From: Podarcis muralis
Taxonomy: Eukaryota
Assembly (NCBI RefSeq): GCF_964188315.1
Contig: NC_135670.1
Coordinates: forward strand, 11,408,001-11,472,000
DNA: 64,000 nt
Reading direction: 5' to 3'
A model generated the notes under the pieces. The model was given only the letters and a program-made list of their open reading frames with translations, had not been told where the DNA came from and made no database searches. Position numbers and translations under genes: made by a program. How positions within the stretch are numbered: the stretch's first letter is position 1; each line of letters begins with the position of its first letter. Below, piece after piece: positions 7,799-64,000 of this stretch.

Positions 7799-9452
7799 TT
7801 CTACTCCGGGGACTTTGATGTATTTAATAGGTTTTTTAAAAAACAACAACTGAACTTTCTAAAAAGAAAGAAAAATGCAGACAATGCAAACCAAATCTGT
7901 GGGTACAAGCAAAGGGAGGAAAGCTGGTGGTCCAGACCAACCCAGCGCTCAACCCAGAATAGATCTGTACAAAGAATCCAGATATCAGAGAATTTCCTGG
8001 TCACCTTCTCATATGCTGCCAGTTGAGTCATGGCTTTTGTCCTCTGTAGGGGTGGTGAGGATGTCACCTTTCTGTATTAGAGTGTTAGACATTTAGCCAC
8101 CCTGAGTGCCCTTAGAAGCCATTTACATAGTCCCTCTGTCAGGTTCCAGAAGACTGGTGCATAATTCAAGAGAACATCCATAAATCTCAAGGTGCTGAAA
8201 ACTGTATTTATGCCGCTGATGACCTCTGGCCAAAAGGGTGTGACTTCATGTATTCATGAATGAAGTTTCTACCACACTCTCCCCTCCCAAGCAATTAAAA
8301 ATGTAGTAAAGAACATACTTTGAAACACCCCTTCATCATTGTCAGCTTTTAGGCACCAGGTTAAGACAATTGTATATACCAGGCCTTTGATAGTTAAATT
8401 AGCCTCTACAATGGTATTCACATTTTTGTAGGCTCAGATTATCATTTTAGGAATTTTGTGTTGTACATCATTTTAATTATTTCTGGTTTTTATATTGTGT
8501 TTTTTATTTTTTTAAGTTGCTTTGAGACTTCCTGTCTAAAGCAATTGACAAATGTAATGAATAGCAACAATTTTAAAACATTAACATCTGAAAGCTTTTT
8601 AAAAAACCAGCCACTTGCCCTCTAAAGTTCCTAGAAACTACATACCAGATATCAAAAGACCTGGGTGAAGAGGACTGTTTTTAAATGCCACCTGATTGCT
8701 CATAATGAGGAAGACAGATGCATCTCAATGGGGGGGGGATTACACAAATGAGGAGCCACCACTGAGAAGGCCATGCTGCTTATGGGGGTCACTGCCAATT
8801 GGACAAACCTTCCATCAGGGTCCTGGATGGTTGGTATTTGAGCTGCTATTTTAGATGTCATGTTGTGCAATTGTAGGAATTGGTGTGTCTTGCAACTGCA
8901 GCAGCCTCTTTTAACAGCACTCAACAATTAGTTTTGCATCCTTTTAAATCCCCTATTGAAGCCAGTGGCCCTCCTTGACCTCTTTCACAAATTGTGTTGT
9001 GGGAGGGAGCAAGGAACCTCTTCCTTCCACTTCTCTTTGCATGCTGCTGCAATTAAGATAAAAACCAGGGAGGGGGACCCCTAAGTGAAACTATAGCCCC
9101 TGATGCGGAAACAGAGCTTGATTTAATTAAAACAAATCCAGTTAAATATTTACATAGAATACATGGTGCTTAGGGTTGGGTTTTTTTAATGCAGGAGGAA
9201 GCAGATTTTCTCCCCTCCCAGCTATGACATACATCACAGCTTCTACTGACAATCTCCGTCGTAAGGAAAGCATGATATGCTAAAGTCTCTGCAGAGGGTG
9301 CACGGTGCCTTCTTGGCATATAAACCAGCTTGCCACGGACATCGCAAACAAATCCAGGGTATTTCCCTCCATTAGTCTTTTATTGGCTACGGTCTGAACT
9401 GCTGCCAGATCCGGAAAAAGATTATGTGCATCCAGTAATGGGGTATTGCTAT

Positions 9453-15681: not shown

Positions 15682-17070
15682 TATGTTCCTTGAATGGGAA
15701 GTTGGGTTTTGGCTAATATTAGCTTGCATCCAACTAAATTCTGCATACCCATTGAGATTCGTGGACTTCAGTTAATCATGTTCATTAATTCCAATGGGTC
15801 GACTCTTGAGTAGAGCTAGCCCTGGTACAACCTACTGTTTTGGATTTTTGCTGGAAGCATGTTGTATACTCTGAGCAATTGTATTTCCACTTTCAATGCC
15901 TTTTCGTTGCCTTACAGAAAACTGTTACACAATAATAATATCGGTAATAGGGTAGTATTAAGCTAATAATTATTTTAGAATAAATAAGAACATCGGAAGC
16001 TGCCTTATACGGAGTCAGACTGTTGGGCCATCTAACTTCGTATTGACCAGCAATGCCTTTCCGGGTCTCTTTACACACTATAGCACATTCAAAGCAATGT
16101 TTCCTTTTGAATAATTTTGGGCATTGTGGTTTGTTCAGGGTTGATGGGAATAGTAAGTCTGTGAGAGGTAAAGGACAGTGCCCAGAATTCTTTGAAGGAA
16201 AGAACATGTTTCAAATGTGGTTTAATGGTGTAAAGGTAAAAGGTTTATATGCCAAAGGCTTGAGGGGAAGATGGGATACATGACGGAGCTTGGAAAGAAG
16301 GAACGACTGTCATGTACATAGGTGTTCCAGGAGGTAGTTGCAGGCAAAGGGGTCAGCAACTGGGAAAGGGCTGTTTCTTTGCCCTGCCTTCTACGCAGAA
16401 CAGAGTGCTCTTTGTTCCACGGCAACCTAAACAACCTTAAGCAAAAATGGGGAAAGGTAAAAGGATTCCCTTGGCAATTTAGTAAGGCAGTGGTACTCTG
16501 AGGGTGTGGCATGCAACATTGGTGTGGCAGGAGAGTCTGGCAAGTGTTGTGGGAAGATTCAGGGACAATCAAAGAAACCTTTAAACATTTCAGCGTAGTA
16601 TAGTATCAAAATAATTATTTTTATTTGCAGAATGTGGATCTTTTCAAAACGAGAGCTAGAACATCAAGTGATACTGAAGACCATCGTAGCTGTGTTTTCC
16701 AACGTATTTATTATCGATTAAAAAATTGGTGTGGCACGAGCACATTTTCATTCCCAAGAAAAAAGTTTGGGAACCATTGTTATAAGGTGGTTTTAGCCTG
16801 GAACACTCTGGCGTGGAGAGAAAGTTATCTTCTTCACCGCTTCAGTTTCTGGGAGATAAGTTGCTTATGAAGGGCCAGGGGTGGGGCCGGTTAAGAACAA
16901 AGAAGCAACTGGGAAAATGTGGCAACCGTACACCTCACTATTGGCTTGTCCAGTGAAATGTCACCTTGTGCATTAAAAAACAACAGTATGATATCACAAT
17001 GTACTTGAGTGTGTCCGCAGTCGGGTAATGTGATTTTGTGGCTATGTACAAATTGAAACATGTGGACATA

Positions 17071-17422
17071 GGGACATGGGTGGCGCTGTGGGTTAAACCA
17101 CAGAGCCTAGGACTTGCCGATCAGAAGGTCGGTGGTTTGAATCCCTGCGATGGGGTGAGCTCCCGTTGCTCGGTCCCTGCTCCTGCCAACCTAGCAGTTC
17201 GAAAGCACGTCAAAGTGCAAGTAGATAAATAGGTACCGCTCCGGCGGGAAGGTAAACGGCGTTTCCGTGCACTGCTCTGGTTCGCCAGAAGCGGCTTAGT
17301 CATGCTGGCCACATGACCTGGAAGCTGTATGCCGGCTCCCTCGGCCAGTAAAGCGAGATGAGCGCCGCAACCCCAGAGTCAGCCACGACTGGACCTAATG
17401 GTCAGGGGTCCCTTTACCTTTA
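17071..17422 (+). mobile_element. Sauria SINE
   Basis: Full head-to-tail match to the other copies. Confidence 0.9.
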
Positions 17423-46832: not shown

Positions 46833-47683
46833 AGCTCAGTCTCTTCACTCTCTTTCGTTGCCTGCTGGCAGAACTCTGGGGTTAGCAGCAAAGGCCATCC
46901 ATGGCTGCAGAACCAGGAAAGTCATATGGATTGGGCTTGGAAGCTCTTTAACCCCATGGACTTTGATGTGGCTAGATTTCCGTTAAAAACACACATAGTC
47001 TTGAGAGGTTTGCTAGACAGGCTGCAACTGTCTAGTTCCTTTGGCTCTCCAGATATTGCTGAACTACAGCTCCCATCATCCCCTGGCCTTTGGCCATCTA
47101 GATGGGGGCTGATGTGAGTTGATGTCCAACAACTTCTAGAGGGGCCCAAAGTCCCCATCCCTAAACTAAAAGTAAGGGTGAGGAACATTTTTCTCTCTCT
47201 GAGGATTGCATGTTGATGTTGGGTGGGGTGTCAAAACAAAAGTGAGTTGGTGAAATGCATACCATGGATACTGTGCACACTTCTATCATCCCCCCCCCCC
47301 CAGCTATGGGGCTTATTGAGGCTAAAGCATTTTGGGAGACTACAGCTGAGGAGGGACATTTTCTGCGCAAAGATCTCACACCCTCCTGTGCAATAACTGG
47401 AAATGCTGGAAAGCAGTCTTCGTTTGGCACCAATATAGAAGGCTTTCCCCCCGAGCCTAATTTTGGGGTACAATTTTTGGCAGATGTTCCAAGGTTGAAA
47501 TATTGTCCCAATAAAATAGCAGAAAACCAGTTCTGTGTCCTGGCTTCTAATTTCTTCCTTGCTCTTTGTGTGATTATAGGTGGTGGGGAACAACATGTTT
47601 ATGGGTTATTGGAAGGAGGTCTCTGGATCAAAAATAAAGGAAATCTGAAATCTATAATTTACTATACAGTAGTTTAGAAAAAT

Positions 47684-48038
47684 GGACGCGGGTGGTGCTG
47701 TGGATTAAACCACAGAGCCTAGGACTTGCTGATCAGAAGGTCGGCGGTTCGAATCCCTGCGACAGGGTGAGCTCCTGTTGCTCAGTCCCTGCTCCTGCCC
47801 ACCTGGCAGTTTGAAAGCATGTCAAAGTGCAAGTAGATAAATAGGTACTGCTCCGGCGGGAAGGGAAACGGCGTTTCCGTGCGCTGCTCTCATTCACCAG
47901 AAGCGGATTAGTCATGCTGTCCACATGACCCGGAAGCTGGACGCCGGCTCCCTCGGCCAGTAAAGCGAGATGAGCACCGCAACCCCAGAGTCGGCCACGA
48001 CTGGGCCTAATGGTCAGGGGTCCCTTTACCGTTACTTT
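47684..48038 (+). mobile_element. Sauria SINE
   Basis: Match to the other copies. Confidence 0.9.
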
Positions 48039-48190
48039 AGTTTAGAAAAGGAGGGAGTGTAGCAACTGTTTACCAAGTTGGGAGCTGCTTATGTGAATTG
48101 ATTGCCACCAGCCCAAGTGCTGGCGCTTAGTTGACATATCAATAGAATGGAACCCCCTCAAATCACGGGAGTAAGTCCCTGTGAACTTGT

Positions 48191-48524
48191 AAAGGTACCC
48201 CTGCCCGTACGGGCCAGTCTTGACAGACTCTAGGGTTGTGCGCCCATCTCACTCAAGAGGCCGGGAGCCAGCGCTGTCCAGAGACACTTCCGGGTCACGT
48301 GGCCAGCGTGACAAGCTGCATCTGGCGAGCCAGAGCCGCACACGGAAACGCCGTTTACCGTCCCGCTAGTAAGCGGTCCCTATTTATCTGCTTGCACCCG
48401 GGGGTGCTTTCGAACTGCTAGGTTGGCAGGCGCTGGGACCGAGCAATGGGAGCGCACCCCGCCGCAGGGATTCGAACCGCCGACCTTTCGATGAGGCTTT
48501 TACCCACAGCGCCACCCGCGTCCC
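48191..48524 (-). mobile_element. Sauria SINE (second subfamily, internal deletion)
   Basis: TSD gtgaacttgta. Confidence 0.9.
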
Positions 48525-48599
48525 GTGAACTTGTACTGTGTGTCAAATAAAAAAACAACTCCAAAGGGGTCTTGCGGCACCTGAAAGGTTAACAAGGTA

Positions 48600-49670
48600 A
48601 TGAATAATGCAACAGCGAGTGGGAGGGACCCGCGGCGGAGCGGCCGGCCGGGCGATTTGAGAAGCGAAGGGGCGGGCTCATGCCGCGGGATCCAATCAGA
48701 AGCCTCGGTGGTGATAGCGCTCTGCGAGACGGGGGAGTCAAGCGGGATCCAAGATGGCGGCGGTAGCCGCGGAGAGGTGAGAGCCGGGCTCACTTGTGGG
48801 GTGGCGGCTGTGGGGGGAGGGCTGTTTTCAGAATGGCTTCCCTCCCTCCCCACCGAAGACCACCAACTCTTCATTCCTCCTGAATGACCCTTCAACTTCC
48901 GGGGCTCCCCTTCAGCCCCCGCTCCCTTCCCACCGTCGCCTTATTCCCGCCCTCCAGCCCCACATGGTCTCCCCGCCCCCATTGTGCTTCCACGTCGCTT
49001 CTGGAAGTGACCTCCTTCCCTCAGGGCGCCCCACAGGTGCGCGTGCTGCTCCTTGCCCCGCATCGCCAGCCCCTGCTCACCCAGCCAGCCCATGGTCCCC
49101 GAATCCCTTGCAGGACCCCTTTCCATTTCTGCACCCCCCACAAGCCCCTTCTAAGGCTTGCAGACCCCTTACAATGCAGCCACCTGCCTGCACGTCTGTC
49201 TACCTGTGCTGTGCGCAAACCATGCATTTAAAACACCCAGTGCAAAGAATCCTGGGAGCTAATTTACCCTGTCAGGGATCTACAATTCCCAGCGCCCTTA
49301 ACCAACTGCACTTCCCTGTATTCTTAGAATCACATAATTGTACAGTTGGAAGGGACCCTGACAGTCATCTAGTTCCGCTCCTTGCAATTCAGTTGGTCAT
49401 CTAGTCCAACCTCTGGCCACCCCCAATTCTTTGGGGAGAGCCGTGTACTCTAAATGTATAGTGTGGATGTGATCCATCTCTGCAATTATTTTTTATTATG
49501 AGACAGGTAATCCAATATCTCCATTTGACAGACCGAGTTCAAGAGACACTGGCCCAGGACCCCCAAACAAATCCGTGGCTGCACGGTGATTTTGAATGCA
49601 GTTTCTGATGGGCATCTCCTTTAGACATGAGAACAGGATGTTGGACTAGATGGACCTTTGATCCAGCAGG
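48600..49670 (+). other. Segmental duplicate of the GANAB promoter, exon 1 and intron 1 start (partner 59370-60390); exon ATG 48754 to donor after 48776 (MAAVAAE+AG)
   Basis: Direct sequence match to 59370-60390, near-identical in the core. Confidence 0.9.
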
Positions 49671-50651
49671 ACTTTTCTTATGTTCATATGTTGTATTCCA
49701 CTGGTCCGTCTAAAACAGGGTCCCTACCACCCACTAGTAGGCGTTTCAGGATTCTAGGTGGGCAGTAGGGGGTTCTATGGCACAAGCTGAACCCTCCTTC
49801 CATTGAGCACTGGTGGGCGGCAAGGAAATTTTACCATCGAAAAAGATGCATTAGTGGGCGGTAGGTATAACAAGGTTGACTACCCCTGGTCCAAAAGAAG
49901 TCATAATGACACCTTTCAAATTACAGGCCCAAAGCCTGTGTGTAAAGTTGCCCCCACACCTTTTGATTTTCAGAATTATTTTTAAATAGTGTAAGTCAAC
50001 GAAATGTATATTCCTACCCCATTTGTTTCCCCGTTTGAGGCCCTTGAGGTCAGGGATCTGTTTTGTTACTCTGCCGCCTGCTTCTTTCCCTTCCTGGTTA
50101 ATTGATTACTGTCTTTTGTTTTCCCTTGTATTTGTACAGAAATCTGAAAGGACTGGTATAAACCGGGGGGGTGGGGGGGTGGAGGGTGAGAATGTGTCAT
50201 GCACTTTCATGATGGTGATGATGATGATTAATGATAATACTAAAAACAGATCATGTAATTAAAAAAAACCTGTTGGGCTTTTAAGGTGCCACAATTTTTC
50301 TTCTTTTTTTAACAGGTGACACATACACCTCAGTTTTGGCAACTGCCCTGTAAAAGAAGCAAAAAACCATTCTGACTGGCAATTGGCAAGTCAAGGCAAT
50401 TGAGGAACGCTCCTCCGGCCAAAGCAGAGTGACACGGCGCTTGCCTTCCATGGGTGCCAAGCTTTATAACGGAAAGTGGAACGCTAATCTGAAGGGACGG
50501 CAGGCCTGCACGGAACTATTTTCCAAGGGGGCCCTTTCTGTGTGCTGTTTGTATGCTTCCCTCAACGCCACTCAACCGCGCGCAGGCGCAGAAGGGAAGT
50601 AGGGGGGACAAAGGGACTGGTTCTTCTGCAGCTTTTCTCCCCCTGGGCGGT

Positions 50652-50740
50652 ATGTCTGCTCTGTGCGATCCCCCAGGGGTGGCAGGGCATCCGGGGTCCA
50701 CCCCCAGCCCCAAACCAGCAGCTGCTTCTCCATCGCTCAG
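50652..50740 (+). CDS. INTS5: INTS5 exon 1 (MSALCDPPGVAGHPGSTPSPKPAAASPSL)
   Basis: MSALCDPPG as in human INTS5; phase 2 donor gtactg; NRF1-like gcgcaggcgca upstream. Confidence 0.9.
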
Positions 50741-51937
50741 GTACTGATTCTCTTACCTCTTCTCTCTCCTCCCTGCCACCTGTAAGGGACTAGGACACCC
50801 CCTTTACGCTGGCACCACCCAGTCCCTTCATCTTTGTACAGAGGGTGTGTTGATGGTCACTTGCTCTGGTGGCTCTGGAAAGGAATAATTACGCTTGTGA
50901 CATTTTACAGAGGTCCCTGCCTCAAAGAGCATGCAGTCTAAAATCCGAAGAGAAGTGGTAGCAGGGAGGGTTAACACAGGGAAAGCATATGTACCATTTA
51001 TGTGCATTTTGGGTGAAGTTGCGGCTACTATTGTGCACAGCAACGGGGGTTGGACTAGATGACCCGTGGGGTCCCTTCCAACTCTGCAAATCTATAAGGC
51101 TTGTTGGGAAATTCAGAAGTGACAGATAGGGTGCCTTGGGATGGGAAATAGGACTGGAGGCAAAGCATCTGCTTTGAGCTCAGAAAGTACTAGGTTCTGT
51201 ACCCAGTAGCATCTCCAGGCAGGGCTGGGAAGAACTGCCTGAAGCCCTGGAGCTACTGCCAGTCAGTGTAACCAATACTGAGCTAGATGGAGAAAGGATC
51301 TGACTTGGTATAAGGGAGCTTCCTATGTTAACATGCTGGATCAGACTCAGGGCTAATAATTACAGAATAATTTTTGAAAGGAAGCTCTCACCACTGGACA
51401 ACTTTCCCCTACCCTGGTCATGTTTTTCTTGTGAAAAGACACATGCATAAGTTCAAATATTTAGCAAATCACATTTTAAAGCAAATTTTAAAAATCATTA
51501 ACACCAGCCATCGTTTATAAAGTGGACTGTGAGCTTATGAATTAAACAGAACACTTTTTCAAGCTGGATAGGGGGGGGGAATTGAAAAGAGAGAAATGCC
51601 TCTGTGGGAACACATGGCGATAAACCTAGTTTCTGTTGTGAGATGGTAATAGAGTAAAGCAGGCATAGGCAAACTCAGCCCTCCAGATGTTTTGGGATTA
51701 CAACTCCCATGATCCCTAGCGAACAGGACCAGTGGTCAGGGATGATGGGAATTGTACTCTCAAAACATCTGGAGGACTGAGTTTGCCTATGCCTGGAGTA
51801 AGCCCTTGCAAGCAAATTAAGGCCCCACCTGTACTACACATTTAAAGCAGTATCATACCACTTTAAAACAGTCTTGTTTAGGAACATTGACCCAGGAATG
51901 ATGCTATGTTTCCTTCTTTTTCCTTTGCCTCCTGCAG

Positions 51938-54746
51938 TTCGCAAGAGCTGGCCCAGGAAATCAAGGCCTTCCTTAGTGGTGTAGACCCTTTGCACGGCAA
52001 CAAACTCACCCTGAAGGAGCATGCCCGATGCGCCATCCTGCTGCTGCGCAGTCTGCCACCTGCTCGCAGCGCCGTCCTGGACCACCTCCGGGGTGTCTTT
52101 GATGAGTACGTGTGCACCTACTTGCTGGACCTGGAGAGCAGCGAGGGTGGGCTGGGCTCCATCCGCTCCCAGGGTCCCAACCTGGACGACGTGGTGCAAG
52201 AGATCCAGGCCGTGCTGTCCGAGTTCGTCCGCATGAACCCCAAGGCGTGGGCAGGCTTGGTCTCGGCCTGGTCCATCGACCTGATGGGACAGCTGAGCAG
52301 CAAGTATGCTGGCCGGCATGGCGTGCCCCACGCCAGCAGCCTCAACGAGCTGCTGCAGCTGTGGATGTCCTGCAAGGCGACTCGGACGCTGATGGAGATC
52401 TACACGCAGTGCCTCTCCTCCATGATCAGCACCTGCCCGGACGCTTGCGTGGACGCCCTGCTGGACACCTCGGTCCAGCACTCTCCGCACTTCGACTGGG
52501 TGGTGGCCCACATCGGCTCGTCCTTCCCCAACACAATCATCAACCGCGTGCTCTCCTGCGGGCTGAAGGACTTCTGCATGCACGGCACGGCCTCGGCCGA
52601 CCTCCTCCTCTTCCCTAGCGCCACAGCGGCAGACAAGAGGGTGCCCAAGATCGCCTCGGTGGTGGGCATCCTGGGCCACTTGGCCTCCCGCCACTCCGAG
52701 AGCATCAGGCAGGAGCTGCTAAGGATGTTCCATGGGAGCCTGGGCCCCACGCGGGACCAGCAGCAGAAGGCCACTGTGCCCTTCTTGCTCCAGCTGGCCG
52801 TCATGTCTCCCACTCTGCTGGGCACCATCTCGGCCGAGCTGGTGGACTCCCTCAAGCCAGGCGTGCTCAACCAGCTGCACCAGCACTTCGCCTCGCTCCC
52901 TCGGGAGGACCTGGAGAACATGGTCAGCATCGTGGTGCACCTCATCTGCCAGACATCGGGAGGAGCTTACCGCACCCTGCAGTTCCTCATCAACACAGCC
53001 ATGCCGGCTTCTGTCATCACCACCCCAGGCCTGGCCGTCCACGACAGCGTGCGGGAGGCTTGCGACCGTGTCATCCAGCTGCTGCTGCTCAACCTCCAGA
53101 AACTGGTGTACAACCGGGGCTCGGCCAGCTTGGCGGAGGCCCCTCCGCGGCCGGTGCCTTTCCTGGACGAGCTGAAGGGCCACGTGCGGGAGCTGTGCGT
53201 GGAGACGCTGCGGCTGGAGAGGAAGAGGTTCCTCTGGCAGCACCAGCTGCTGGTCCTCCTCTCCGTCTACTGCACCCCCAGCTGCGCCAGCGAGGCCCTC
53301 TTCTTTTTGCTGACGCTGGCCAAGAGCCAGGAGGAGCTCAGCCTGGCCACTCAGCTCTACGCCGTGCTCAGCTCTTGCATGAGCGACCTGCTGCCGGCCA
53401 CCGTGAAGAAGTGCGTGTGCCAGATCCACGCTGGCGGCCTCTCGGAGCAGCACATGGCTCAGCTCTTCCAGAACCTGGCCTTGATCATGCAGAGGGAGAG
53501 TGAGGGCCCCGCCTCCATGGGCCACCAGCTGGGTGAGGCTGTCGCGGCGCACCTCTATGACTTCGGGCAGCTCCTGCTGCACTGCAACCCAGAGGTGGCC
53601 CAGGTGGCGGCCTTGCTGCTCTCCGTCTGCCCCATGCCAAAGGCCATCCGGCCGGCTCACCTCCTTTTCCTCATCCGCTCGGCCGTCCACCACTTCTTCC
53701 TAGTGCTGCGCTGCAAGTGCCCCACGGGCATCAGCTACGGAAGCCGCCTCCTCTGCTGCCTCAGCGGGGCTTCGCCCACCGCTGGCAAGGCCATACTTCA
53801 GTACCTGGTGGAGGGGGCCCTGCACCCAGGGAACGCCGAGCTCTTTGGTGGGCTGCCCGAGCCTCCTGCAGTCGGGAACGACCCTGCCGCCCTGGAAGGC
53901 ACCAAGGTCTCCCTGCTGGATATCAACCGGCGATTTATGGCCGCGGTGAACTTCTCGGGGAGTGTGTGGTCTGTCTTCCATGCCGGCGTGATTGGGAGGG
54001 GCCTGAAGCCGCCCCACGCCCCCTACCAACGAGAGCCGGAGGAGGTCTCCCACAACGTCCAGACCTTCCTGGGGTTGCTGCTGCGGTGCTGCGGAGCTGA
54101 GCGCTGCAGCCCGGAGCCCTCCCAGCACGCTGCCGTCAGCCCCGAGGCGGCGAAGACGGTGGCGGTGGTGCTGGTGGAGACCGTCTGCCCTGACATCACC
54201 AACAGCGAGTTGGCGTGGCCTCCGGAGGAGCACACCCGCAACACAGTGGAGCGGGATATCCAGATCGGGAGGGCTTTCCGCGACAACCCCCTGCTCTTCC
54301 AGCTGCTTAGCCTGGTGGCGGCGGGGAGGCCGGCCCTCTGTTACTGCTCGGTGCTTCTCCGCGGCCTCCTGGCGACTCTGATGGCGCACTGGGAGGCTTC
54401 GCGGGAGAACGACACCACCAGCTCCCCCTGGCACCTGCAGGCCTCCTGCGCCCTGGTGGCCTGCATGGGCGAGGGCCACCTCCTCCCGCCCGTGCTCAGC
54501 AACATGCATGAGATTTTTGACCAGCTGGCGCCCTTTGAGGTCCACCTCTTGCTCCTCAGCGTCTGGGACTACATGCGCGACAACAGCCCGCTGCCGCAGA
54601 AGTTCACCTTCAACGCTGGCACAGGACTCTTCTTCCGGGACTTCAGCAGAGACACCGACATTGGCAAATACCTTTGCGTTCTGCACAGCGTCCTGCATAA
54701 AAACATTGACCGGCTGGGGTTGCTCTCGGGGCGCTTCCAGATCTAG
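51938..54746 (+). CDS. INTS5: Integrator complex subunit 5, large exon 2; 965 aa in total
   Basis: [46 protein letters not shown] motifs; two-exon structure as in human. Confidence 0.97.
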
Positions 54747-56906
54747 CGCCCCTTTTGGTGCTTTTGCCCTGTGGGATTGGTCAGCCCGCCTGCCACTGTC
54801 AGGGGAGGGAACATCCTGCCTTTCTGCCTTTTTAAAACTCTGCTTTTGATTGTAAGCAAAGGGGAAACTGTCATATGACTTGTCCAGGTGTGCAGCAGTT
54901 GGGGGTTGTCATGAGAAAGAAGGAACAGAAGGTCCTTCTTTCCCAGGCCTCATCTCTATCCTCAGCTTCAATGCAATGCCACCCCAGCTGGTGTTGGCAG
55001 CTTAGTTTGCAGAAGGACCTACGAAGTGTGAGCTGAAAATGCAGTTGTAAGCCATGAGATGTTGCTTCAAAAACACAACATGCAGCAAGTAGAGAAGTTG
55101 CCAGGATGACCTGGCACTTGAGAGGGTCAGAGGCCTCGGTTAAAGCCAGATGGTACCAGTATGGACACAGTCTTGTGTACTCTGCTGTGTGCCATGTGAT
55201 ATGGCTGTCAGTGTCAGTTGACATGGCCATATCCAGGTAGCCTGAGGGCCGAATGCCTGAAACTTTTGCATTTCTCTATCTTGTTTTTCCAGATCTGTTA
55301 GCTCACTTCCTATGGTCCTATATGGCTGGTTTCTCAATGTCTTGCTATGATCTGGAAATCTGTTAAGATTCCCACGGAGGTTACAATCGCTGAGCAGGTA
55401 CACATTCCTAAATGCACAAGAATGGGGAGGGGACAAGGAAGGAAAATTTGGTGAATAAATTCTGGTACAAACCACCCCTCCCCGCAAAAAAACCCAAACC
55501 CATTTCCCTGTAATAAAGGACAAATAGATTAAGTAATAATCACTTACTGGGCTGCTTGGTTGGTGAGTGGGTATAAGAATGTGCAAATATTTCTAGTTAC
55601 ACAGAGCTGGTGAAATGTTGCCCTTCTGAAGAGCTCTGCATAACTTGGAAGACTCATGTTTCTGGGTTATGCAGAGCTCTTCTGTGGGCCCAAAATGCAA
55701 ATGCTTCAACACGAGCAGGGCCCAGTCAGTACTGCCTTGCTTGACGTGAGAGTGTTTTCCCCAGACTGCTTCACTAAAGTAAGGATTTGGGCAGGTGAAG
55801 CCTTTTGCCTGTTGGGCTGCTTCTTAGAGTGGCTCTGAGCTGGCCATTGATTGCCCCCTACTACAATTCCTGTGATGGGGGTTTGCCACATGGGGTTGTA
55901 GCCAGCTAAGTCCTATTCATTGAAGCTTTGATTTCAGTGGGCCTTCTCTGAGTAGCACTTGGATACAACACTTTGCATAAACAGATGTGGCCAGCTTATC
56001 TTACAAAACAGAGGGCTCTTCTCCAGAAGGTTTCTGATGCTGTTGTGTGGGAACAACTGACCATAATGCCAGAACTTGCCTAAACTTATCCATGCATACT
56101 TGAGCACCGATCTATATAGCCAGTCCAAAGAGAGATGTCCCCCTATTGGTACCAGAGCTCCGCTTGTGTGTGACAAGAGTCCTGCTTGACCTCTTTGTGC
56201 CTAAATGCCGTCTGGGCAATTACTACTTTCCTTTTCAGGGACGATTCAAGTGCTACAAAGAGGTCATGTGTAGCACGGGGTTCTTGCTGTCAGTCATTTT
56301 CAGCAGGGCTGGAGGGTTGCTGGCCTTTCTGCTTTTGCATCATCACAGCCCAGTTGGGTGGTTTTTGTGGGAGGTGATGGGTTAAACCGTTTTCTAAATA
56401 ATAAAAAAAGTGAAGAAGGAACTTCTGTCCCTTTGCTTTTTCAGTTAGAGACAGAGGGCTAAGAGAATTTCCATCTGGATGGCGAAATAAGCAGTTGCAA
56501 CAATGTGGTTGAGCAAATTTCAATTTCTTTTTTAAAAAAGGAAAAGGAGCTTATATGACTCTGCAGCTGGCTTGGCATACAAAGAGCAGCTCACACAGCA
56601 CTGGCACTTTTATCCAGAAAGAGTGTTCCTGCAAATTCTTTGTCATTTGTAAAAAATCATCATCATAATTAAATGACAAATTCCAGCCAACGAAAGAACA
56701 CCAGCGGCCTTCCACCTGGGTTTGCTCAGGGGTTTAGGAAGCCAAAGAAGATCAGTGCAATTTTGTGATCTGCGGTTAGAATCAGTGCTGTTTCAAAAGG
56801 TTCAGTCTGCCATCTTGATTTAAAAAACCTGTCCAAACACAGAGAAAAACTTGTTCCTTGATCTCGGGAAGCATTGTGCAAAATTTGGTTATGGTATTTT
56901 AAGAGG

Positions 56907-57874: not shown

Positions 57875-59537
57875 AGTAGATATACATACATACATACATA
57901 CATACATACATACAAACAAACATATAAGAACCCTGCTGCATCAGGCCATTGTCTCATCGAAGTCCAGCCTCCTGTTCACACTGACTGATCAGATCCCTCG
58001 CAGGAGGACAGAGTGCTGTTGTGCTCATGTCCTGCTTTCAGGTTCTCCACAGGCTTCTGGTTGGCCACTGAGAGAACAGGATGCTGGACTAGATGGGTCA
58101 ATGGCCTGATCTAGCGGGTGTGTCTTACCTTCTTAAGACATTCTTACCCAGGGATGTGTTGCCCTCCAGGTGTCATTGGGCTTTAGCTCTCATCAGCCCC
58201 AGGCAGCACAGGCAACAGGGAAGTTGCAGTTCCAGAGCACCTGGAAGGCCACAAGGTCACCTCAACTCTAACCACTACACCACACTGCCTTTCTTGATAG
58301 CTTAGAATTCAGTGCGGCTTTTACCATGTCAAACTTATTGGCAGCAGCTCTGTAGGGTTTAATTCGGGGTAAATTCTTAGCCCTACATGGAGACACTAAT
58401 GACTGAATTATTGGGACCTTCTGCATGCGAAGCAGGTGCTCTGCTGTTGAGCTATGGCCCTCTCGCCATCGCCAGCTACCTGATCCTGTTAACTGATGAC
58501 TGGTGCCATATCCACACTGTACATTTAAGCCGCATGGCTTCCCTTGAATAATAATGGGAACTGTAATTTAAGGGTGTTGGGAATTGTAGCTCCTAAGGAT
58601 AAACTGCAGTTTCCAGGGTTTGGGGTTGGAGAAGCCACGACTGTTAAAGGGGTAGGTCTTTAGCTTTTAAAAATTTTATTTGACTAAATCAGGGGTCTGC
58701 AACCCGCGGCTCCGGAACCGCATGTGGCTCTTTTACACCTTTGCCGCAGCTCCGGGGCGGATACTAGCGAGGGGAGGAGGCGCATTGTGCGCCCTGACAC
58801 TCCCCACTGTGGCGGGCGCTGCCCGCTGTCAGATCGCGGCTCCCAAGATATATTTGTTTTAAATGTCACAATGGTTTTGTGGCTCCCAGTTTTTTTTTTC
58901 TTTCGGAAACGGGTCCAAGTGGCTCTTTTTGTCTTAAAGGTTGCAGACCCCTGGACTAAATCATTCGAAGGGAGATGTGTGTTGGAATAAAAGAGGATAT
59001 ATACAGCCCCAAATGAACAGAGTTTGGGGCATTGCGGTGGGGGACAGCTGGCTTCTCGTTTTTGGCTAGATGAACACACATCCTACTGCTCACTTTCTAA
59101 GATTTCAGAAAGGGGCCAGGACCAGTCCAAGACTCCTTTCTCAGAATCGGATCCCTGACGTTCATTTCCCCCAGGACGGGACCCAGGCGTTCGAGTTTCC
59201 TATCTCACAATAGGATCCAGGCACCGAAGCTTCGTGTCATCATGATTTCCCAGAATGGGACCCAGGCGTCCGAGCACTGCCTGCCCCCATCCCCCGCTCC
59301 CGGGAAACGTGCCTTTGCCGCCGTGCCTTAGCGGCCTCCGGTGTACGCACGCGCCGGGAAAGCCCGCTCATGAATAATGCGACAGCGAGTGGGAGGGACC
59401 CGCGGCGGAGCGGCCGGCCGGCCGATTCGAGAAGCGAAGGGGCGGGCTCATGCCGCCGGATCCAATCAGAAGCCTCGGTGGGGACGGGGTGGGGCAGATA
59501 ACCCTCGGCGGGAGGGGGGAGTGAAGCGGGATCCAAG

Positions 59538-59563
59538 ATGGCGGCGGCGGCAGCAGTAGGGAG
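59538..59563 (+). CDS. GANAB: GANAB exon 1 (MAAAAAVG+AG)
   Basis: aagATGG Kozak; gtgaga donor; phase 2 joins exon 2; CpG promoter with CCAAT and GC box. Confidence 0.8.
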
Positions 59564-60744
59564 GTGAGAACGAGGCTCACTTGTGGGGTGGCGGCTCTGC
59601 GGGGTAGGGCGTGGGGGGAGGGCTGTTTTCAGAATGGCTTCCCTCCCTCCCCACCGAAGACCACCAACTCTTCATTCCTCCTGAATGACCCTTCAACTTC
59701 CGGGGCTCCCCTTCAGCCCCCGCTCCCTTCCCACAGCCGCCTTATTCCCGCCCTCCAGCCCCACATGGTCTCCCCGCCCCCATTGTGCTTCCACGTCGCT
59801 TCTGGAATTGACCTTCTTCCCTCAGGGCGCCCCACAGGTGCGCGTGCTGCTCCTTGCCCCGCATCGCCAGCCCCTGCTCACCCAGCCAGCCCATGGTCCC
59901 CGAATCCCTTGCAGGACCCTTTTCCATTTCTCCACCCCCCATAAGCCCCTTCTAAGGCTTGCAGACCCCTTACAATGCAGCCACCTGCCTACACGCCTGT
60001 CTACCTGTGCTGTGCGCACACCATGCATTTAAAACACTCAGTGCAAAGAATCCTGGGAGCTAATTTACCCTGTCAGGGATCTACAGTTCCCAGCGCCCTT
60101 CACCAACTGCACTTTTCTGGATATTTTGCGGTGTAGCTAGGCCTCCCAATGTATGGTGTGGGTACGACCTTTCTCTCATTCATCTCCACAGTTACTTTTT
60201 ATTATGAAGCAGATAATCCAATATTTCCATTCTGGCAGACCGAGTTCAGGGGACACTAGTCCAAAACCACCTAAGCAAAACCAAGGCTGGGCTTTGATTT
60301 CAAACTTAGTTTGCAAGATTCCTCTGGGGATCTGGTTTGACTGTGAGAACAGGATCTTGGACTAGATGGGCCTTTCACTTGATCCAGCTGTCCTTTGTAG
60401 CCCATTGGCTAGCCTGCCGTGCTCTGTACCAGTTATTAAGAAGCACAGCACTGACCCTTTTTGCTTGTTGACCATTTCATTTTCAGTTACTTTTATTTTG
60501 TATGTTCTTGAGGACTAGAAACTTTCTTCTGCTGAGATTTACAGAAAACTATGAAAATGATTTGTACTGTGGACTGTGCTCTGCGCAGTTGTGAACACTG
60601 ATCTGCACATTTTTGCATAGCCATGGGTCTGTGCTGTAGAGCATCTGATTGGAGATGCCACTGGCAGTCAGTGTCAAGAACGCTGGGCTAGGTGGACCGT
60701 TGTGCCAACTCAGTACAAAGCAGCTTCCTATGTACCTGTGCTGT

Positions 60745-63023: not shown

Positions 63024-63361
63024 TTGTTGTTGTTTAGTCGTTTAGTCGTGTCCGACTCTTCGTGACCCCCTGGACCAGAGCACGCCAGGCACCTCTGTCC
63101 TCCACTACTTCCCGCAGTTTGGTCAAACTCATGCTGGTAACCTCGAAAACACTATCCAGCCATCTCGTCCTCTGTCGCCCCCTTCTCCTTGTGCCCTCCA
63201 TCTTTCCCAGCATCAGGGTCTTCTCCAGGGAGTCTTCTCTTCTCATGAGGTGGCCAAAGTACTGGAGCCTCAGCTTCACGATCTGTCCTTCCAGTGAGCA
63301 CTCAGGGCTGATTTCCTTAAGAATGGATGTGTTTGATCTTCTTGCAGTCCATGGGACCCTC
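63024..63361 (-). mobile_element. BovB LINE 3' fragment in GANAB intron 1
   Basis: Near-identical to 2927-3263. Confidence 0.93.
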
Positions 63362-63872
63362 ATGGTCCCTTCCAACTCTACAATTCTGTGACTCCATTAT
63401 TCTATCTATCTTCTGTAGACCATTCCCATTCTCGTTTCCCTTTTTCATTGAAGCAATTGAGCAGCCTGTGTCAGTGGGATCTTAGCTTTGAAAAGGCATT
63501 CTGTGTCTGTGCTGCTTGGGTTAGGCTGGTGTAGGAATTCCAGATGGCACCTGGGCCTTAAACATCCCTTTTGAGCACAATCCAGGTAGTTGTAGGATGA
63601 ACCTTGGTGGTTAATGCTAGCTGGCCTGGAGCAGGCACCTTGAGTGAGACCCTGGTCCATCTAGCTCAGTATTGTCTGCACTTACTGGCAGCAGCACTCC
63701 AGGGTTTCAGGCAGGGAGTCTGCCCTACCTCTGCCTGGAGATAAATCCGGGGCCATTTACATCAAAACACACTTTCTGTCTCTGTGAGCCAGCAGCCCTC
63801 AAGTACAACTGGTGGTGGGGAGTCTGCAAGTTAACAATGTGTTGCATGGAGAAATGTCTTCCTTCCCAATAG

Positions 63873-63974
63873 ACTCGAGATGGCAGCTCTTGCTTGGTTA
63901 GCTCTTTCCCTGGCTGTTGTCACTGCTGTGGACAGAAGCAACTTCAAGACATGTGACCAGAGCTCTTTTTGCAA
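63873..63974 (+). CDS. GANAB: GANAB (glucosidase II alpha) exon 2: signal peptide plus [17 protein letters not shown]; the gene continues beyond the window
   Basis: [15 protein letters not shown] signature; aatag acceptor and gtaagt donor. Confidence 0.95.
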
Positions 63975-64000
63975 GTAAGTTGGGCGTCTTATCTCTGCTG

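What the first reader, a model, noticed from the sequence alone, without database searches (positions are those of the whole stretch)
48600..49670. Duplicated GANAB promoter and exon 1 placed in front of INTS5, in frame with INTS5 exon 2
Seen: about 1 kb matching 59370-60390 retains the GC box, CCAAT, CpG density, aagATGG Kozak/YY1 site and GTGAGA donor. Its coding part is 23 nt (MAAVAAE+AG, phase 2), the same phase as INTS5 exon 1 and GANAB exon 1. Splicing to 51938 would give [17 protein letters not shown]..., an INTS5 with a new N-terminus; splicing to 63873 would give in-frame GANAB with INTS5 nested in its intron. The ATG and donor are preserved although the adjacent 5'UTR has diverged. 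Inference: promoter capture that could put an Integrator subunit under the control of an ER glucosidase promoter.
Basis: partly seen in the sequence, partly recalled or inferred. Interest (0 to 1): 0.8.

Follow-up and report, generated by a model that had tools for sequence, protein, structure and literature searches.

The report
Old GANAB promoter duplicate before INTS5
Wall lizards and their relatives carry an old 1-kb extra copy of the GANAB gene's start (promoter, first exon, start of intron) just upstream of the neighbouring INTS5 gene. Repeated copying from the real GANAB start keeps it GANAB-like, and there is no evidence yet that INTS5 uses it.

Summary
Window 48600-49715 is a true paralogue of the GANAB 5' end at 59370-60422: core promoter, 23-nt versus 26-nt coding exon 1, donor, and the start of intron 1. 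The frame arithmetic to INTS5 exon 2 (51938) and GANAB exon 2 (63873) holds.

It is not an assembly artefact. The window is Podarcis muralis, and both copies sit at the same two places in P. raffonei, P. lilfordi, Zootoca vivipara and Lacerta agilis. Rhineura, Elgaria and Hemicordylus have only the GANAB copy.

New here: the 5' 720 bp evolves in concert. A and B pair by species, and A-monophyly is rejected (AU p=5e-7). The 3' ~290 bp, beyond a ~105-nt transposable-element (TE) insert found only in A, separates into old A and B clades at about 76% identity. So this is an old duplication homogenised by gene conversion.

All five A copies keep CCAAT, the YY1-ATG motif, the donor, phase 2 and CpG-island density. 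However:
- conversion and triplet slippage can explain this;
- copy A is no more conserved than its neutral flanks;
- INTS5 keeps its own conserved promoter and exon 1;
- no lacertid protein starting with copy A's exon is on record;
- no ER-stress motif is present.

Promoter capture remains possible but unshown.

The parts
48600..48753 (+). Copy A: duplicated GANAB core promoter and 5'UTR. GC box 48669-48676, CCAAT 48692-48696, YY1 motif from 48751.
   Evidence: Alignment with 59370-59537. Motif scan. CpG o/e 1.11 at 48600-48799.
48754..48776 (+). Copy A: exon-1-like coding part, ATG + 20 nt (MAAVAAE + AG, phase 2). The donor GT follows at 48777-48778.
   Evidence: Phase 2 is kept in all five lacertid A copies (20, 23, 23, 23 and 26 nt).
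48777..49321 (+). Copy A: intron-1-like part of the 5' stratum, homogenised with copy B by gene conversion.
   Evidence: 96.9% identity to copy B within P. muralis. A and B pair by species in all five species. A-monophyly is rejected, AU p=4.6e-7.
49322..49427 (+). TE-derived insert of about 105 nt, present in all A copies and absent from B copies and Rhineura. It marks the 3' limit of the converted tract.
   Evidence: alignment. Part of it matches another repeat copy at 63360-63394 on the minus strand.
49428..49715 (+). Copy A: 3' stratum, unconverted old paralogue of GANAB intron 1.
   Evidence: 75-76% identity to 60123-60422. A clade 98/98 and B clade 100/99. Homologous to the single copy in Rhineura GANAB intron 1.
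59370..60422 (+). Copy B: the resident GANAB core promoter, exon 1 (ATG 59538, 26-nt CDS MAAAAAVG + AG, donor GT 59564) and the start of intron 1.
   Evidence: The annotated GANAB CDS start in L003 is 18986, which is window 59538.
50463..50740 (+). Native INTS5 promoter and exon 1. The conserved start MSALCDP is at 50652, with an upstream in-frame ATG at 50553. The donor follows 50740.
   Evidence: 75% identity to Rhineura and 73% to Elgaria. 95-98% identity among lacertids.
51938..54746 (+). INTS5 exon 2, a phase-2 acceptor carrying the rest of the CDS to the stop.
   Evidence: 100% identity to Podarcis INTS5; Pfam INTS5_N and INTS5_C.
63873..63975 (+). GANAB exon 2 (phase-2 acceptor; signal peptide and [16 protein letters not shown]).
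   Evidence: Neighbouring gene called with GH31 domains.
50290..50316 (+). Candidate acceptor (T-rich tract + AACAG|G; the exon would start at 50316) between copy A and INTS5 exon 1, conserved in five lacertids. Use is untested.

Best explanation
What it is. Copy A is an old dispersed duplicate, specific to the lacertid lineage, of the GANAB 5' end. It was about 1.0 kb originally and is 1.1 kb now. It holds about 150 bp of core promoter, exon 1 and the first ~0.85 kb of intron 1. It was inserted in the same orientation into the spacer between the DUF5564-family gene and INTS5, 1.9 kb upstream of INTS5's own exon 1 and 10.8 kb upstream of the resident GANAB start.

Shown:
- The duplication predates the split of Podarcis, Zootoca and Lacerta.
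- Its first 720 bp has since been repeatedly homogenised with the functional GANAB copy by interlocus gene conversion.
- The converted tract is bounded on the 5' side by the end of homology and on the 3' side by a TE fragment that entered copy A early.

Inferred:
- The preserved ATG, donor, reading phase and CpG-island character of copy A are mainly by-products of three things: conversion from a copy under selection, triplet (GCN) slippage, and probable germline hypomethylation. Selection for an INTS5 chimera is not needed to explain them.
- The copy probably still behaves as a small unmethylated CpG-island promoter able to start some transcription.
- Any such transcripts would use the 48776 donor and join INTS5 acceptors (50316 in the 5' leader, or 51938 in frame) as minor forms beside the native INTS5 promoter.
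For: Presence and position:
- Both copies are present and syntenic in five lacertid genomes.
- Copy A is absent upstream of INTS5 in Rhineura, Elgaria and Hemicordylus.
- The flanks of copy A are collinear with the Rhineura DUF5564-INTS5 spacer, so this was a simple insertion.

Concerted evolution:
- In the intron part of the 5' stratum, A and B pair by species in all five species, with support 92-100.
- They share species-specific indels: a 14-nt deletion in Zootoca and a CAGCAG insertion in Lacerta.
- A-monophyly is rejected, p-AU 4.6e-7.
- The adjacent 3' stratum gives the opposite tree: A clade 98/98, B clade 100/99, and species pairs rejected at p<=7e-5.
- A-B identity there is about 76%, against 91-93% for Podarcis-Zootoca orthologues. 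The duplication is therefore about 3-4 times older than that split.
- The ~105-nt insert found only in copy A sits at the boundary.

Conversion mosaics: in P. lilfordi the A exon is B-type, while in P. muralis and P. raffonei the A 5'UTR/exon patch is A-type.

CpG-island state: o/e is 0.88-0.94 in A against 0.98-1.04 in B. Only 0-2 of 23 consensus CpGs have decayed to TpG/CpA in either class.

No excess constraint: orthologous identity of copy A equals that of its flanks, while the native INTS5 promoter is more conserved. The GC box is lost in Zootoca A.

No chimeric INTS5 protein is on record in any lacertid.
Against: - The 5'UTR/exon patch that escaped conversion in P. muralis and P. raffonei (A vs B 84.7%) still keeps the YY1-ATG motif, the donor, phase 2 and as many CpGs as B. 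This is what a used first exon would show, although the sites are few.
- Zootoca INTS5 has two consecutive NCBI protein accessions with the same sequence. That would fit transcript variants differing only in UTR, possibly in an upstream 5' exon.
- No RNA, CAGE or methylation data could be consulted, so activity is neither shown nor excluded.
- The annotation-based null is weak: 5'UTR-only variants leave no trace in protein databases, and Logan holds no lacertid INTS5 fragments.
Confidence: 0.5

Rival explanations
1. True promoter and first-exon capture. Copy A is a selected alternative INTS5 promoter, and its 23-nt exon splices to 51938. The product is an INTS5 with a 7-residue N-terminus ([17 protein letters not shown]), expressed with GANAB-like core-promoter logic.
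For: - Intact CCAAT, YY1-ATG and donor, and phase 2, in all five A copies.
- These features persist in the unconverted Podarcis patch.
- CpG-island state with no decay.
- Strong, conserved acceptor at 51938.
- A short N-terminus is tolerated in nature: caecilian INTS5 starts [17 protein letters not shown] and frog INTS5 is also short.
Against: - No such isoform is annotated in five lacertid genomes.
- No excess conservation over neutral flanks.
- GC box lost in Zootoca A.
- The native INTS5 promoter and exon 1 are fully conserved.
- Conversion and triplet slippage explain the retained features.
Confidence: 0.2
2. Inert relic. Copy A is silent DNA, neither transcribed nor bound. It looks like a promoter only because GANAB's copy keeps overwriting it.
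For: - Gene conversion is demonstrated.
- Divergence between species is at the neutral level.
- No gene model lies over it.
Against: - CpGs are not decayed even in the patch that has escaped conversion since before the P. muralis-P. raffonei split, and A copies carry 2-5 private CpGs. Silent, methylated DNA in this genome has CpG o/e of about 0.2-0.4.
Confidence: 0.22
3. Alternative GANAB first exon. Transcripts start at copy A and splice to GANAB exon 2 at 63873, with INTS5 nested in a 15-kb first intron.
For: - In frame (AG+A = R).
- In some other tetrapods (Heteronotia, Pelobates, Rhinophrynus), INTS5 proteins are filed as 'GANAB isoforms'. So INTS5 and GANAB gene models can share transcripts.
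Against: - Such transcripts would have to run through the INTS5 acceptors and polyadenylation region.
- Lacertid INTS5 and GANAB are annotated as separate genes, and the GANAB CDS starts at copy B in all five.
Confidence: 0.05
4. Assembly artefact, or independent recent duplications in each species.
For: High within-species A/B identity (95-97% over 720 bp) on its own could suggest a recent or false duplication.
Against: - Same insertion site, same boundaries, the same insert found only in copy A, and an old A clade in the 3' stratum across five independent assemblies.
- A and B differ by indels and about 5% substitutions within each genome.
Confidence: 0.01

Closest known systems
Concerted evolution of short linked duplicates by interlocus gene conversion with a sharp tract boundary. 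The textbook case, recalled from memory, is the human G-gamma/A-gamma globin genes (HBG2/HBG1), where conversion stops at a sequence discontinuity in IVS2.
   Same: - Paralogues a few kb apart are more alike within a species than orthologues are between species.
- An adjacent segment keeps the old paralogue-specific divergence.
- The boundary coincides with a heterology, here a ~105-nt TE insert.
   Different: - The unit here is only a promoter, first exon and partial intron, not a whole gene.
- One partner has no demonstrated function.
- An unrelated gene (INTS5) lies between the two copies.
Alternative first exons and promoters created by duplication of a 5' gene end. Examples are variable-first-exon genes such as UGT1A and clustered protocadherins (from memory), and the Drosophila gene hydra with duplicated alternative first exons (PMC1904467, title and abstract only).
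   Same: A duplicated promoter plus first exon with an intact donor lies upstream of a constant exon with a phase-compatible acceptor.
   Different: - The duplicated first exon comes from the neighbouring, unrelated gene, not from INTS5 itself.
- Use of the exon is not shown.
- No chimeric product is annotated.
Orphan (non-annotated) CpG islands.
   Same: - A GC-rich, CpG-undepleted block outside any annotated TSS. The CpG-rich stretch (o/e above 0.8) runs about 48200-48800, but its upstream ~350 bp is the adjacent P. muralis-specific SINE, so copy A's own share is about 200-260 bp.
- It carries GC box, CCAAT and YY1 motifs.
   Different: Its origin is known: it is a copy of the GANAB island. 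Its CpG content may be topped up by conversion rather than by its own protection from methylation.

Membership tests
Interlocus gene conversion / concerted evolution | Paralogues within a species are closer than orthologues between species | tested here: met
   In the intron part of the 5' stratum, A/B identity is 95.6-98.6% within species and 91.6-94.7% between genera. A and B pair by species in 5 of 5 species. A-monophyly is rejected, p-AU 4.6e-7.
Interlocus gene conversion / concerted evolution | A neighbouring segment of the same duplicate keeps orthology, so the tree is discordant and there is a tract boundary | tested here: met
   In the 3' stratum the A clade has support 98/98 and the B clade 100/99. 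Species pairs are rejected at p<=7e-5. The boundary lies at the TE insert found only in copy A.
Interlocus gene conversion / concerted evolution | Derived indels shared by both copies of one species only | tested here: met
   A 14-nt deletion occurs in both Zootoca copies, and a CAGCAG insertion in both Lacerta copies.
Promoter / first-exon capture (alternative first exon of INTS5) | Foreign promoter and first exon upstream, with an intact donor and a phase compatible with the next exon | tested here: met
   Phase 2 in all five species.
Promoter / first-exon capture (alternative first exon of INTS5) | Chimeric spliced product exists | tested here: not met
   No lacertid INTS5 of about 943 aa or with an MAA... 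start is found in NCBI, UniRef or Logan proteins. A fragment search found nothing. Power is low, and UTR-only variants cannot be seen this way.
Promoter / first-exon capture (alternative first exon of INTS5) | Transcription initiates at the captured promoter | not testable with these tools
   No CAGE, RNA-seq, ATAC or methylation data are available. CpG retention is only indirect evidence.
Promoter / first-exon capture (alternative first exon of INTS5) | Purifying selection on the captured elements beyond the neutral rate | tested here: not met
   Copy A shows 88-96% identity between Podarcis and Zootoca, the same as its flanks, against 95-98% for the native INTS5 promoter. The GC box is lost in Zootoca A.
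ER-stress-responsive promoter (ERSE/UPRE-driven) | ERSE (CCAAT-N9-CCACG), ERSE-II or UPRE motif in the duplicated promoter | tested here: not met
   No match on either strand in any of the ten copies (first 260 nt). None in window 48000-48800 or 58700-59600.
False (assembly) duplication | Seen in one assembly only, or the copies are identical | tested here: not met
   Present in five species' assemblies. The copies differ by about 5% plus indels.
Retrocopy | Lacks promoter and introns | tested here: not met
   Copy A contains promoter and intron sequence.

The most novel reading that the evidence does not exclude
Copy A is a working second INTS5 promoter in lacertids. Under this reading, a GANAB-derived core promoter and 7-codon first exon have been kept in register with GANAB's own start by gene conversion for tens of millions of years. 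The conversion partly couples expression of an Integrator subunit to that of ER glucosidase II and yields a short-N-terminus INTS5. That N-terminus would be almost the same as the natural caecilian INTS5 N-terminus ([17 protein letters not shown]), hinting that a 'MAA' YY1-type first exon has been recruited to INTS5 more than once.
Probability: 0.13. Interest if true: 0.55.

Novelty: new member of a known kind. Interest (0 to 1): 0.33.

Why it matters
This is a clean, datable natural example of a duplicated promoter-plus-first-exon module kept in concerted evolution with its source across an intervening essential gene. The conversion boundary is set by a TE insertion.

It also shows why preserved ATG, donor and frame in a young-looking duplicate is not evidence of function when a selected paralogue can overwrite it.

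If the copy proved active, it would be a tractable case of one housekeeping gene borrowing its neighbour's core promoter. Junction reads and CAGE in any of five sequenced lacertids could test this.

As it stands, it is an ordinary kind of structural feature. It has modest interest, mainly for people studying gene conversion and promoter evolution.

Tried and rejected
1. Assembly artefact: rejected, because both copies are present in five independent assemblies.

2. The weak 3' similarity being two unrelated TE copies: rejected. The segment is collinear, has no other copy in the window, and is orthologous to a Rhineura GANAB intron-1 segment. A even keeps 17 nt that B has lost.

3. Tandem duplication of [INTS5 + GANAB 5' end] followed by loss of one INTS5: not needed. 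Both flanks of A are collinear with the Rhineura DUF5564-INTS5 spacer.

4. The SINE at 48189-48539 as the vehicle of the duplication: rejected, because it is specific to P. muralis.

5. The duplication being shared with Rhineura: Rhineura has its own 657-nt paralogous pair in the two analogous places. That pair lies inside a Rhineura-specific insertion and has no similarity to the lacertid copies.

6. Searching for the chimeric INTS5 product:
- full-length search and cluster listing found none;
- the fragment search returned no lacertid fragments at all, so it has low power.

7. Caecilian loci, to test whether their MAAAVVG exon is GANAB-derived: DNA was not retrievable.

8. Literature: nothing on INTS5/GANAB duplication or read-through in reptiles.

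9. Rooting the A/B/Rhineura triplet with Elgaria: too little alignable sequence, about 60-120 nt.

10. I did not check lacertid GANAB isoforms for an MAAVAAER start, because no full-length GANAB protein reference was obtainable within the tools' length rules.

Full report
**1. What is in the sequence**

Reading 48400-49900 and 59200-60600 and aligning them shows a genuine paralogous pair. A self-BLAST of 48000-50600 against the whole window gives two collinear matches and no other copy:
- 48600-49321 vs 59370-60122 (753 columns, 91% counting gaps);
- 49472-49675 vs 60178-60396 (74%).

The element upstream, at 48189-48539, is an unrelated multi-copy SINE.

Copy A carries these features:
- a GC box at 48669-48676;
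- CCAAT at 48692-48696;
- AAGATGGCGGC at 48751-48761, with the ATG at 48754;
- a 23-nt coding stretch (MAAVAAE + AG);
- the donor AG|GTGAGA, with GT at 48777.

Copy B has the same layout, with the ATG at 59538, 26 coding nt (MAAAAAVG + AG) and GT at 59564.

**2. Gene context**

- The 946-codon ORF at 51906-54746 is INTS5 exon 2. It is 100% identical to Podarcis INTS5 and its relatives carry Pfam INTS5_N and INTS5_C.
- The native INTS5 exon 1 is at 50652-50740 (MSALCDPPGVAG...PSL + AG, 89 nt, phase 2). An in-frame upstream ATG at 50553 is the one used by the 998-aa lacertid models.
- INTS5 exon 2 begins at 51938 after a strong pyrimidine tract.
- GANAB exon 2 begins at 63873 and reads (R)LEMAALAW...[17 protein letters not shown].

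The window equals P. muralis GCA_964188315.1, record OZ076970.1 (0 mismatches over 23,448 nt). In that record the annotated INTS5 CDS starts at window 50553. The GANAB CDS (GH31 domains) starts at window 59538, which is copy B. The gene order is DUF5564-family gene, copy A, INTS5, copy B/GANAB.

**3. Not an artefact, and not young**

I retrieved the INTS5 loci of these species:
- Zootoca vivipara (L001)
- Lacerta agilis (L002)
- P. raffonei (L005)
- P. lilfordi (L006)
- Rhineura floridana (L004)
- Elgaria multicarinata (L007)
- Hemicordylus capensis (L008)

All four other lacertids have both copies at the same two positions. The three outgroups have the GANAB promoter only at GANAB.

The flanks of copy A are collinear with the Rhineura DUF5564-INTS5 spacer: 47416-47452 and 50045-50135 match Rhineura 7957-7993 and 9301-9393. 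The event therefore looks like a simple insertion of about 1 kb.

**4. Two strata and gene conversion**

*5' stratum.* This covers the promoter, exon 1 and about 540 nt of intron. Here the two copies within a species are more alike than orthologues are between genera.
- In the intron part, A and B pair by species in all five species. Support is Zootoca 100/99, Lacerta 96/93, P. raffonei 92/95, P. muralis 93/93 and P. lilfordi 93/91.
- Both Zootoca copies share a 14-nt deletion, and both Lacerta copies share a CAGCAG insertion.
- Forcing the A copies into one clade costs 111 log-likelihood units (p-AU 4.6e-7).

*Boundary.* Immediately 3' of this stratum, all A copies carry a ~105-nt TE-derived insert (49322-49427). 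It is absent from every B copy and from Rhineura.

*3' stratum.* Beyond the insert (49428-49715 vs 60123-60422) the picture reverses.
- The A copies form one clade (98/98) and the B copies another (100/99).
- A-B identity is only 75-77%.
- The single Rhineura copy, in GANAB intron 1, is 70-74% identical to both.
- Species pairing is rejected at p<=7e-5.

*Dating.* I applied the Jukes-Cantor correction by hand to the identities.

| Comparison | Distance |
|---|---|
| A vs B | about 0.30 |
| Podarcis vs Zootoca orthologues | 0.076-0.095 |
| Lacertid copies vs Rhineura | 0.32-0.37 |

The duplication is therefore about 3-4 times older than the Podarcis-Zootoca split, and nearly as old as the lacertid-amphisbaenian split. 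This dating is an inference from only about 290 columns. It assumes a molecular clock and no conversion in that stratum.

*Mosaics.* Conversion tracts are also visible as patchworks. The 5'UTR/exon patch of P. muralis A and P. raffonei A is A-type: 94.9% to each other and 84.7% and 85.7% to their own B copies. In P. lilfordi A the exon has been overwritten to B-type, MAAAAVVG.

**5. Does copy A look used?**

For:
- All five A copies keep CCAAT, the YY1-ATG motif and the donor. Their coding length is 20, 23, 23, 23 or 26 nt, always phase 2.
- CpG o/e in the first 260 nt is 0.88-0.94 in A and 0.98-1.04 in B. The window average is 0.44, and the flanking non-island DNA is 0.2-0.4.
- Only 0-2 of 23 consensus CpGs show TpG/CpA decay in either class, and A copies have 2-5 private CpGs.
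- This holds even in the Podarcis patch that has escaped conversion. It points to germline hypomethylation, that is, a live CpG island.

Against:
- Conversion from a selected partner preserves features passively, and GCN-repeat slippage naturally changes length in threes.
- Orthologous identity of copy A between Podarcis and Zootoca or Lacerta (84-96% per 100 nt) is no higher than in neighbouring spacer and intron. It is lowest over the promoter and exon. The native INTS5 promoter and exon 1 are 93-99% identical and alignable to Rhineura and Elgaria.
- The GC box is destroyed in Zootoca A.
- Only about 150 bp upstream of the ATG was copied.
- None of the ten copies, nor their upstream flanks, contains an ERSE, ERSE-II or UPRE motif.

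**6. Product evidence**

- Among 424 INTS5 homologues, every lacertid protein is either 998 aa (MLPSTPLN...MSALCDP...) or 965 aa (MSALCDP...). None starts with copy A's exon.
- No coding gene is called over copy A in any of the five lacertid records.
- A search for shorter N-terminal fragments returned no lacertid sequences at all, so transcript-assembly coverage of these species is too poor to count as a test.
- One hint remains open. Zootoca has two consecutive accessions with the same INTS5 protein, which would fit transcript variants differing only in UTRs.
- A conserved candidate acceptor at 50316 lies between copy A and INTS5 exon 1. In P. muralis that junction would close the copy-A reading frame after 8 codons, making a uORF.

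**7. Verdict**

The functional inference of promoter capture by INTS5 is neither shown nor excluded. My estimates are:

| Reading | Probability |
|---|---|
| Conversion-maintained duplicate CpG island of at most minor transcriptional consequence | about 0.5 |
| Selected alternative INTS5 promoter and first exon | about 0.2 |
| Silent relic | about 0.2 |
| Alternative GANAB first exon | about 0.05 |

Comparable phenomena are well known, including concerted evolution of linked duplicates and alternative first exons created by duplication. I therefore rate it a new member of a known kind, of modest interest.

Noticed in passing
window 48189-48539: A tRNA-derived SINE sits 60 nt upstream of copy A. 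It has several copies in the window at 77-89% identity. It is present in P. muralis but absent at this site in P. raffonei, P. lilfordi and L. agilis, so it is a recent insertion next to the duplicated promoter. It is itself CpG-rich (o/e 0.8-1.0).
   Followed up: partly
window 50553-50651: All lacertid INTS5 models (998 or 996 aa) start at an upstream in-frame ATG (MLPSTPLNRAQAQKG...), 33 codons before the conserved MSALCDP start. Hemicordylus and Paroedura models also start with an MLP... extension. It is unclear whether this is real N-terminal extension or 5' leader.
   Followed up: partly
proteins P0005 (Heteronotia binoei), P0044 (Rhinophrynus dorsalis), P0061 (Pelobates fuscus): Proteins that are plainly INTS5 (INTS5_N and INTS5_C domains) are named 'neutral alpha-glucosidase AB isoform' by NCBI. 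In these species the INTS5 and GANAB gene models were merged, which suggests shared or read-through transcripts between the two neighbours in other tetrapods.
   Followed up: no
proteins P0128 (Microcaecilia), P0130 (Geotrypetes), P0024 (Rhinatrema isoform X2): Caecilian INTS5 begins MAAA(A)VVGSS(Q/K)ELAQEIK. This short MAA-type first exon, 8.7-18 kb upstream of exon 2, is nearly the same as the hypothetical lizard chimera [17 protein letters not shown] and resembles GANAB exon 1 (MAAAAAVG). The DNA could not be fetched, so its origin is untested.
   Followed up: partly
L004 (Rhineura floridana) 8667-9296 and 16765-17421: Rhineura has its own 630-657-nt paralogous pair (80% identity), one copy upstream of INTS5 and one in GANAB intron 1. 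These are the same two neighbourhoods as in lacertids, but the pair is not homologous to the lacertid duplicate. It is partly SINE-derived and lies within a Rhineura-specific intron insertion. It may be an independent TE insertion or an independent exchange between the two sites.
   Followed up: partly
L005 (P. raffonei) about 9240 onward; L002 (L. agilis) copy A: Copy A has lost most of its 3' stratum in P. raffonei, through a deletion after about 100 nt. In L. agilis it has several internal deletions (21 nt and 9 nt in the intron part, and part of the TE insert). This fits relaxed constraint on the non-promoter part.
   Followed up: no
window 54747-56514: Long stretches downstream of the INTS5 stop remain alignable to Rhineura at 70-74% (54700-54902, 56067-56514). 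This suggests a long conserved INTS5 3'UTR, or regulatory sequence between INTS5 and GANAB.
   Followed up: no
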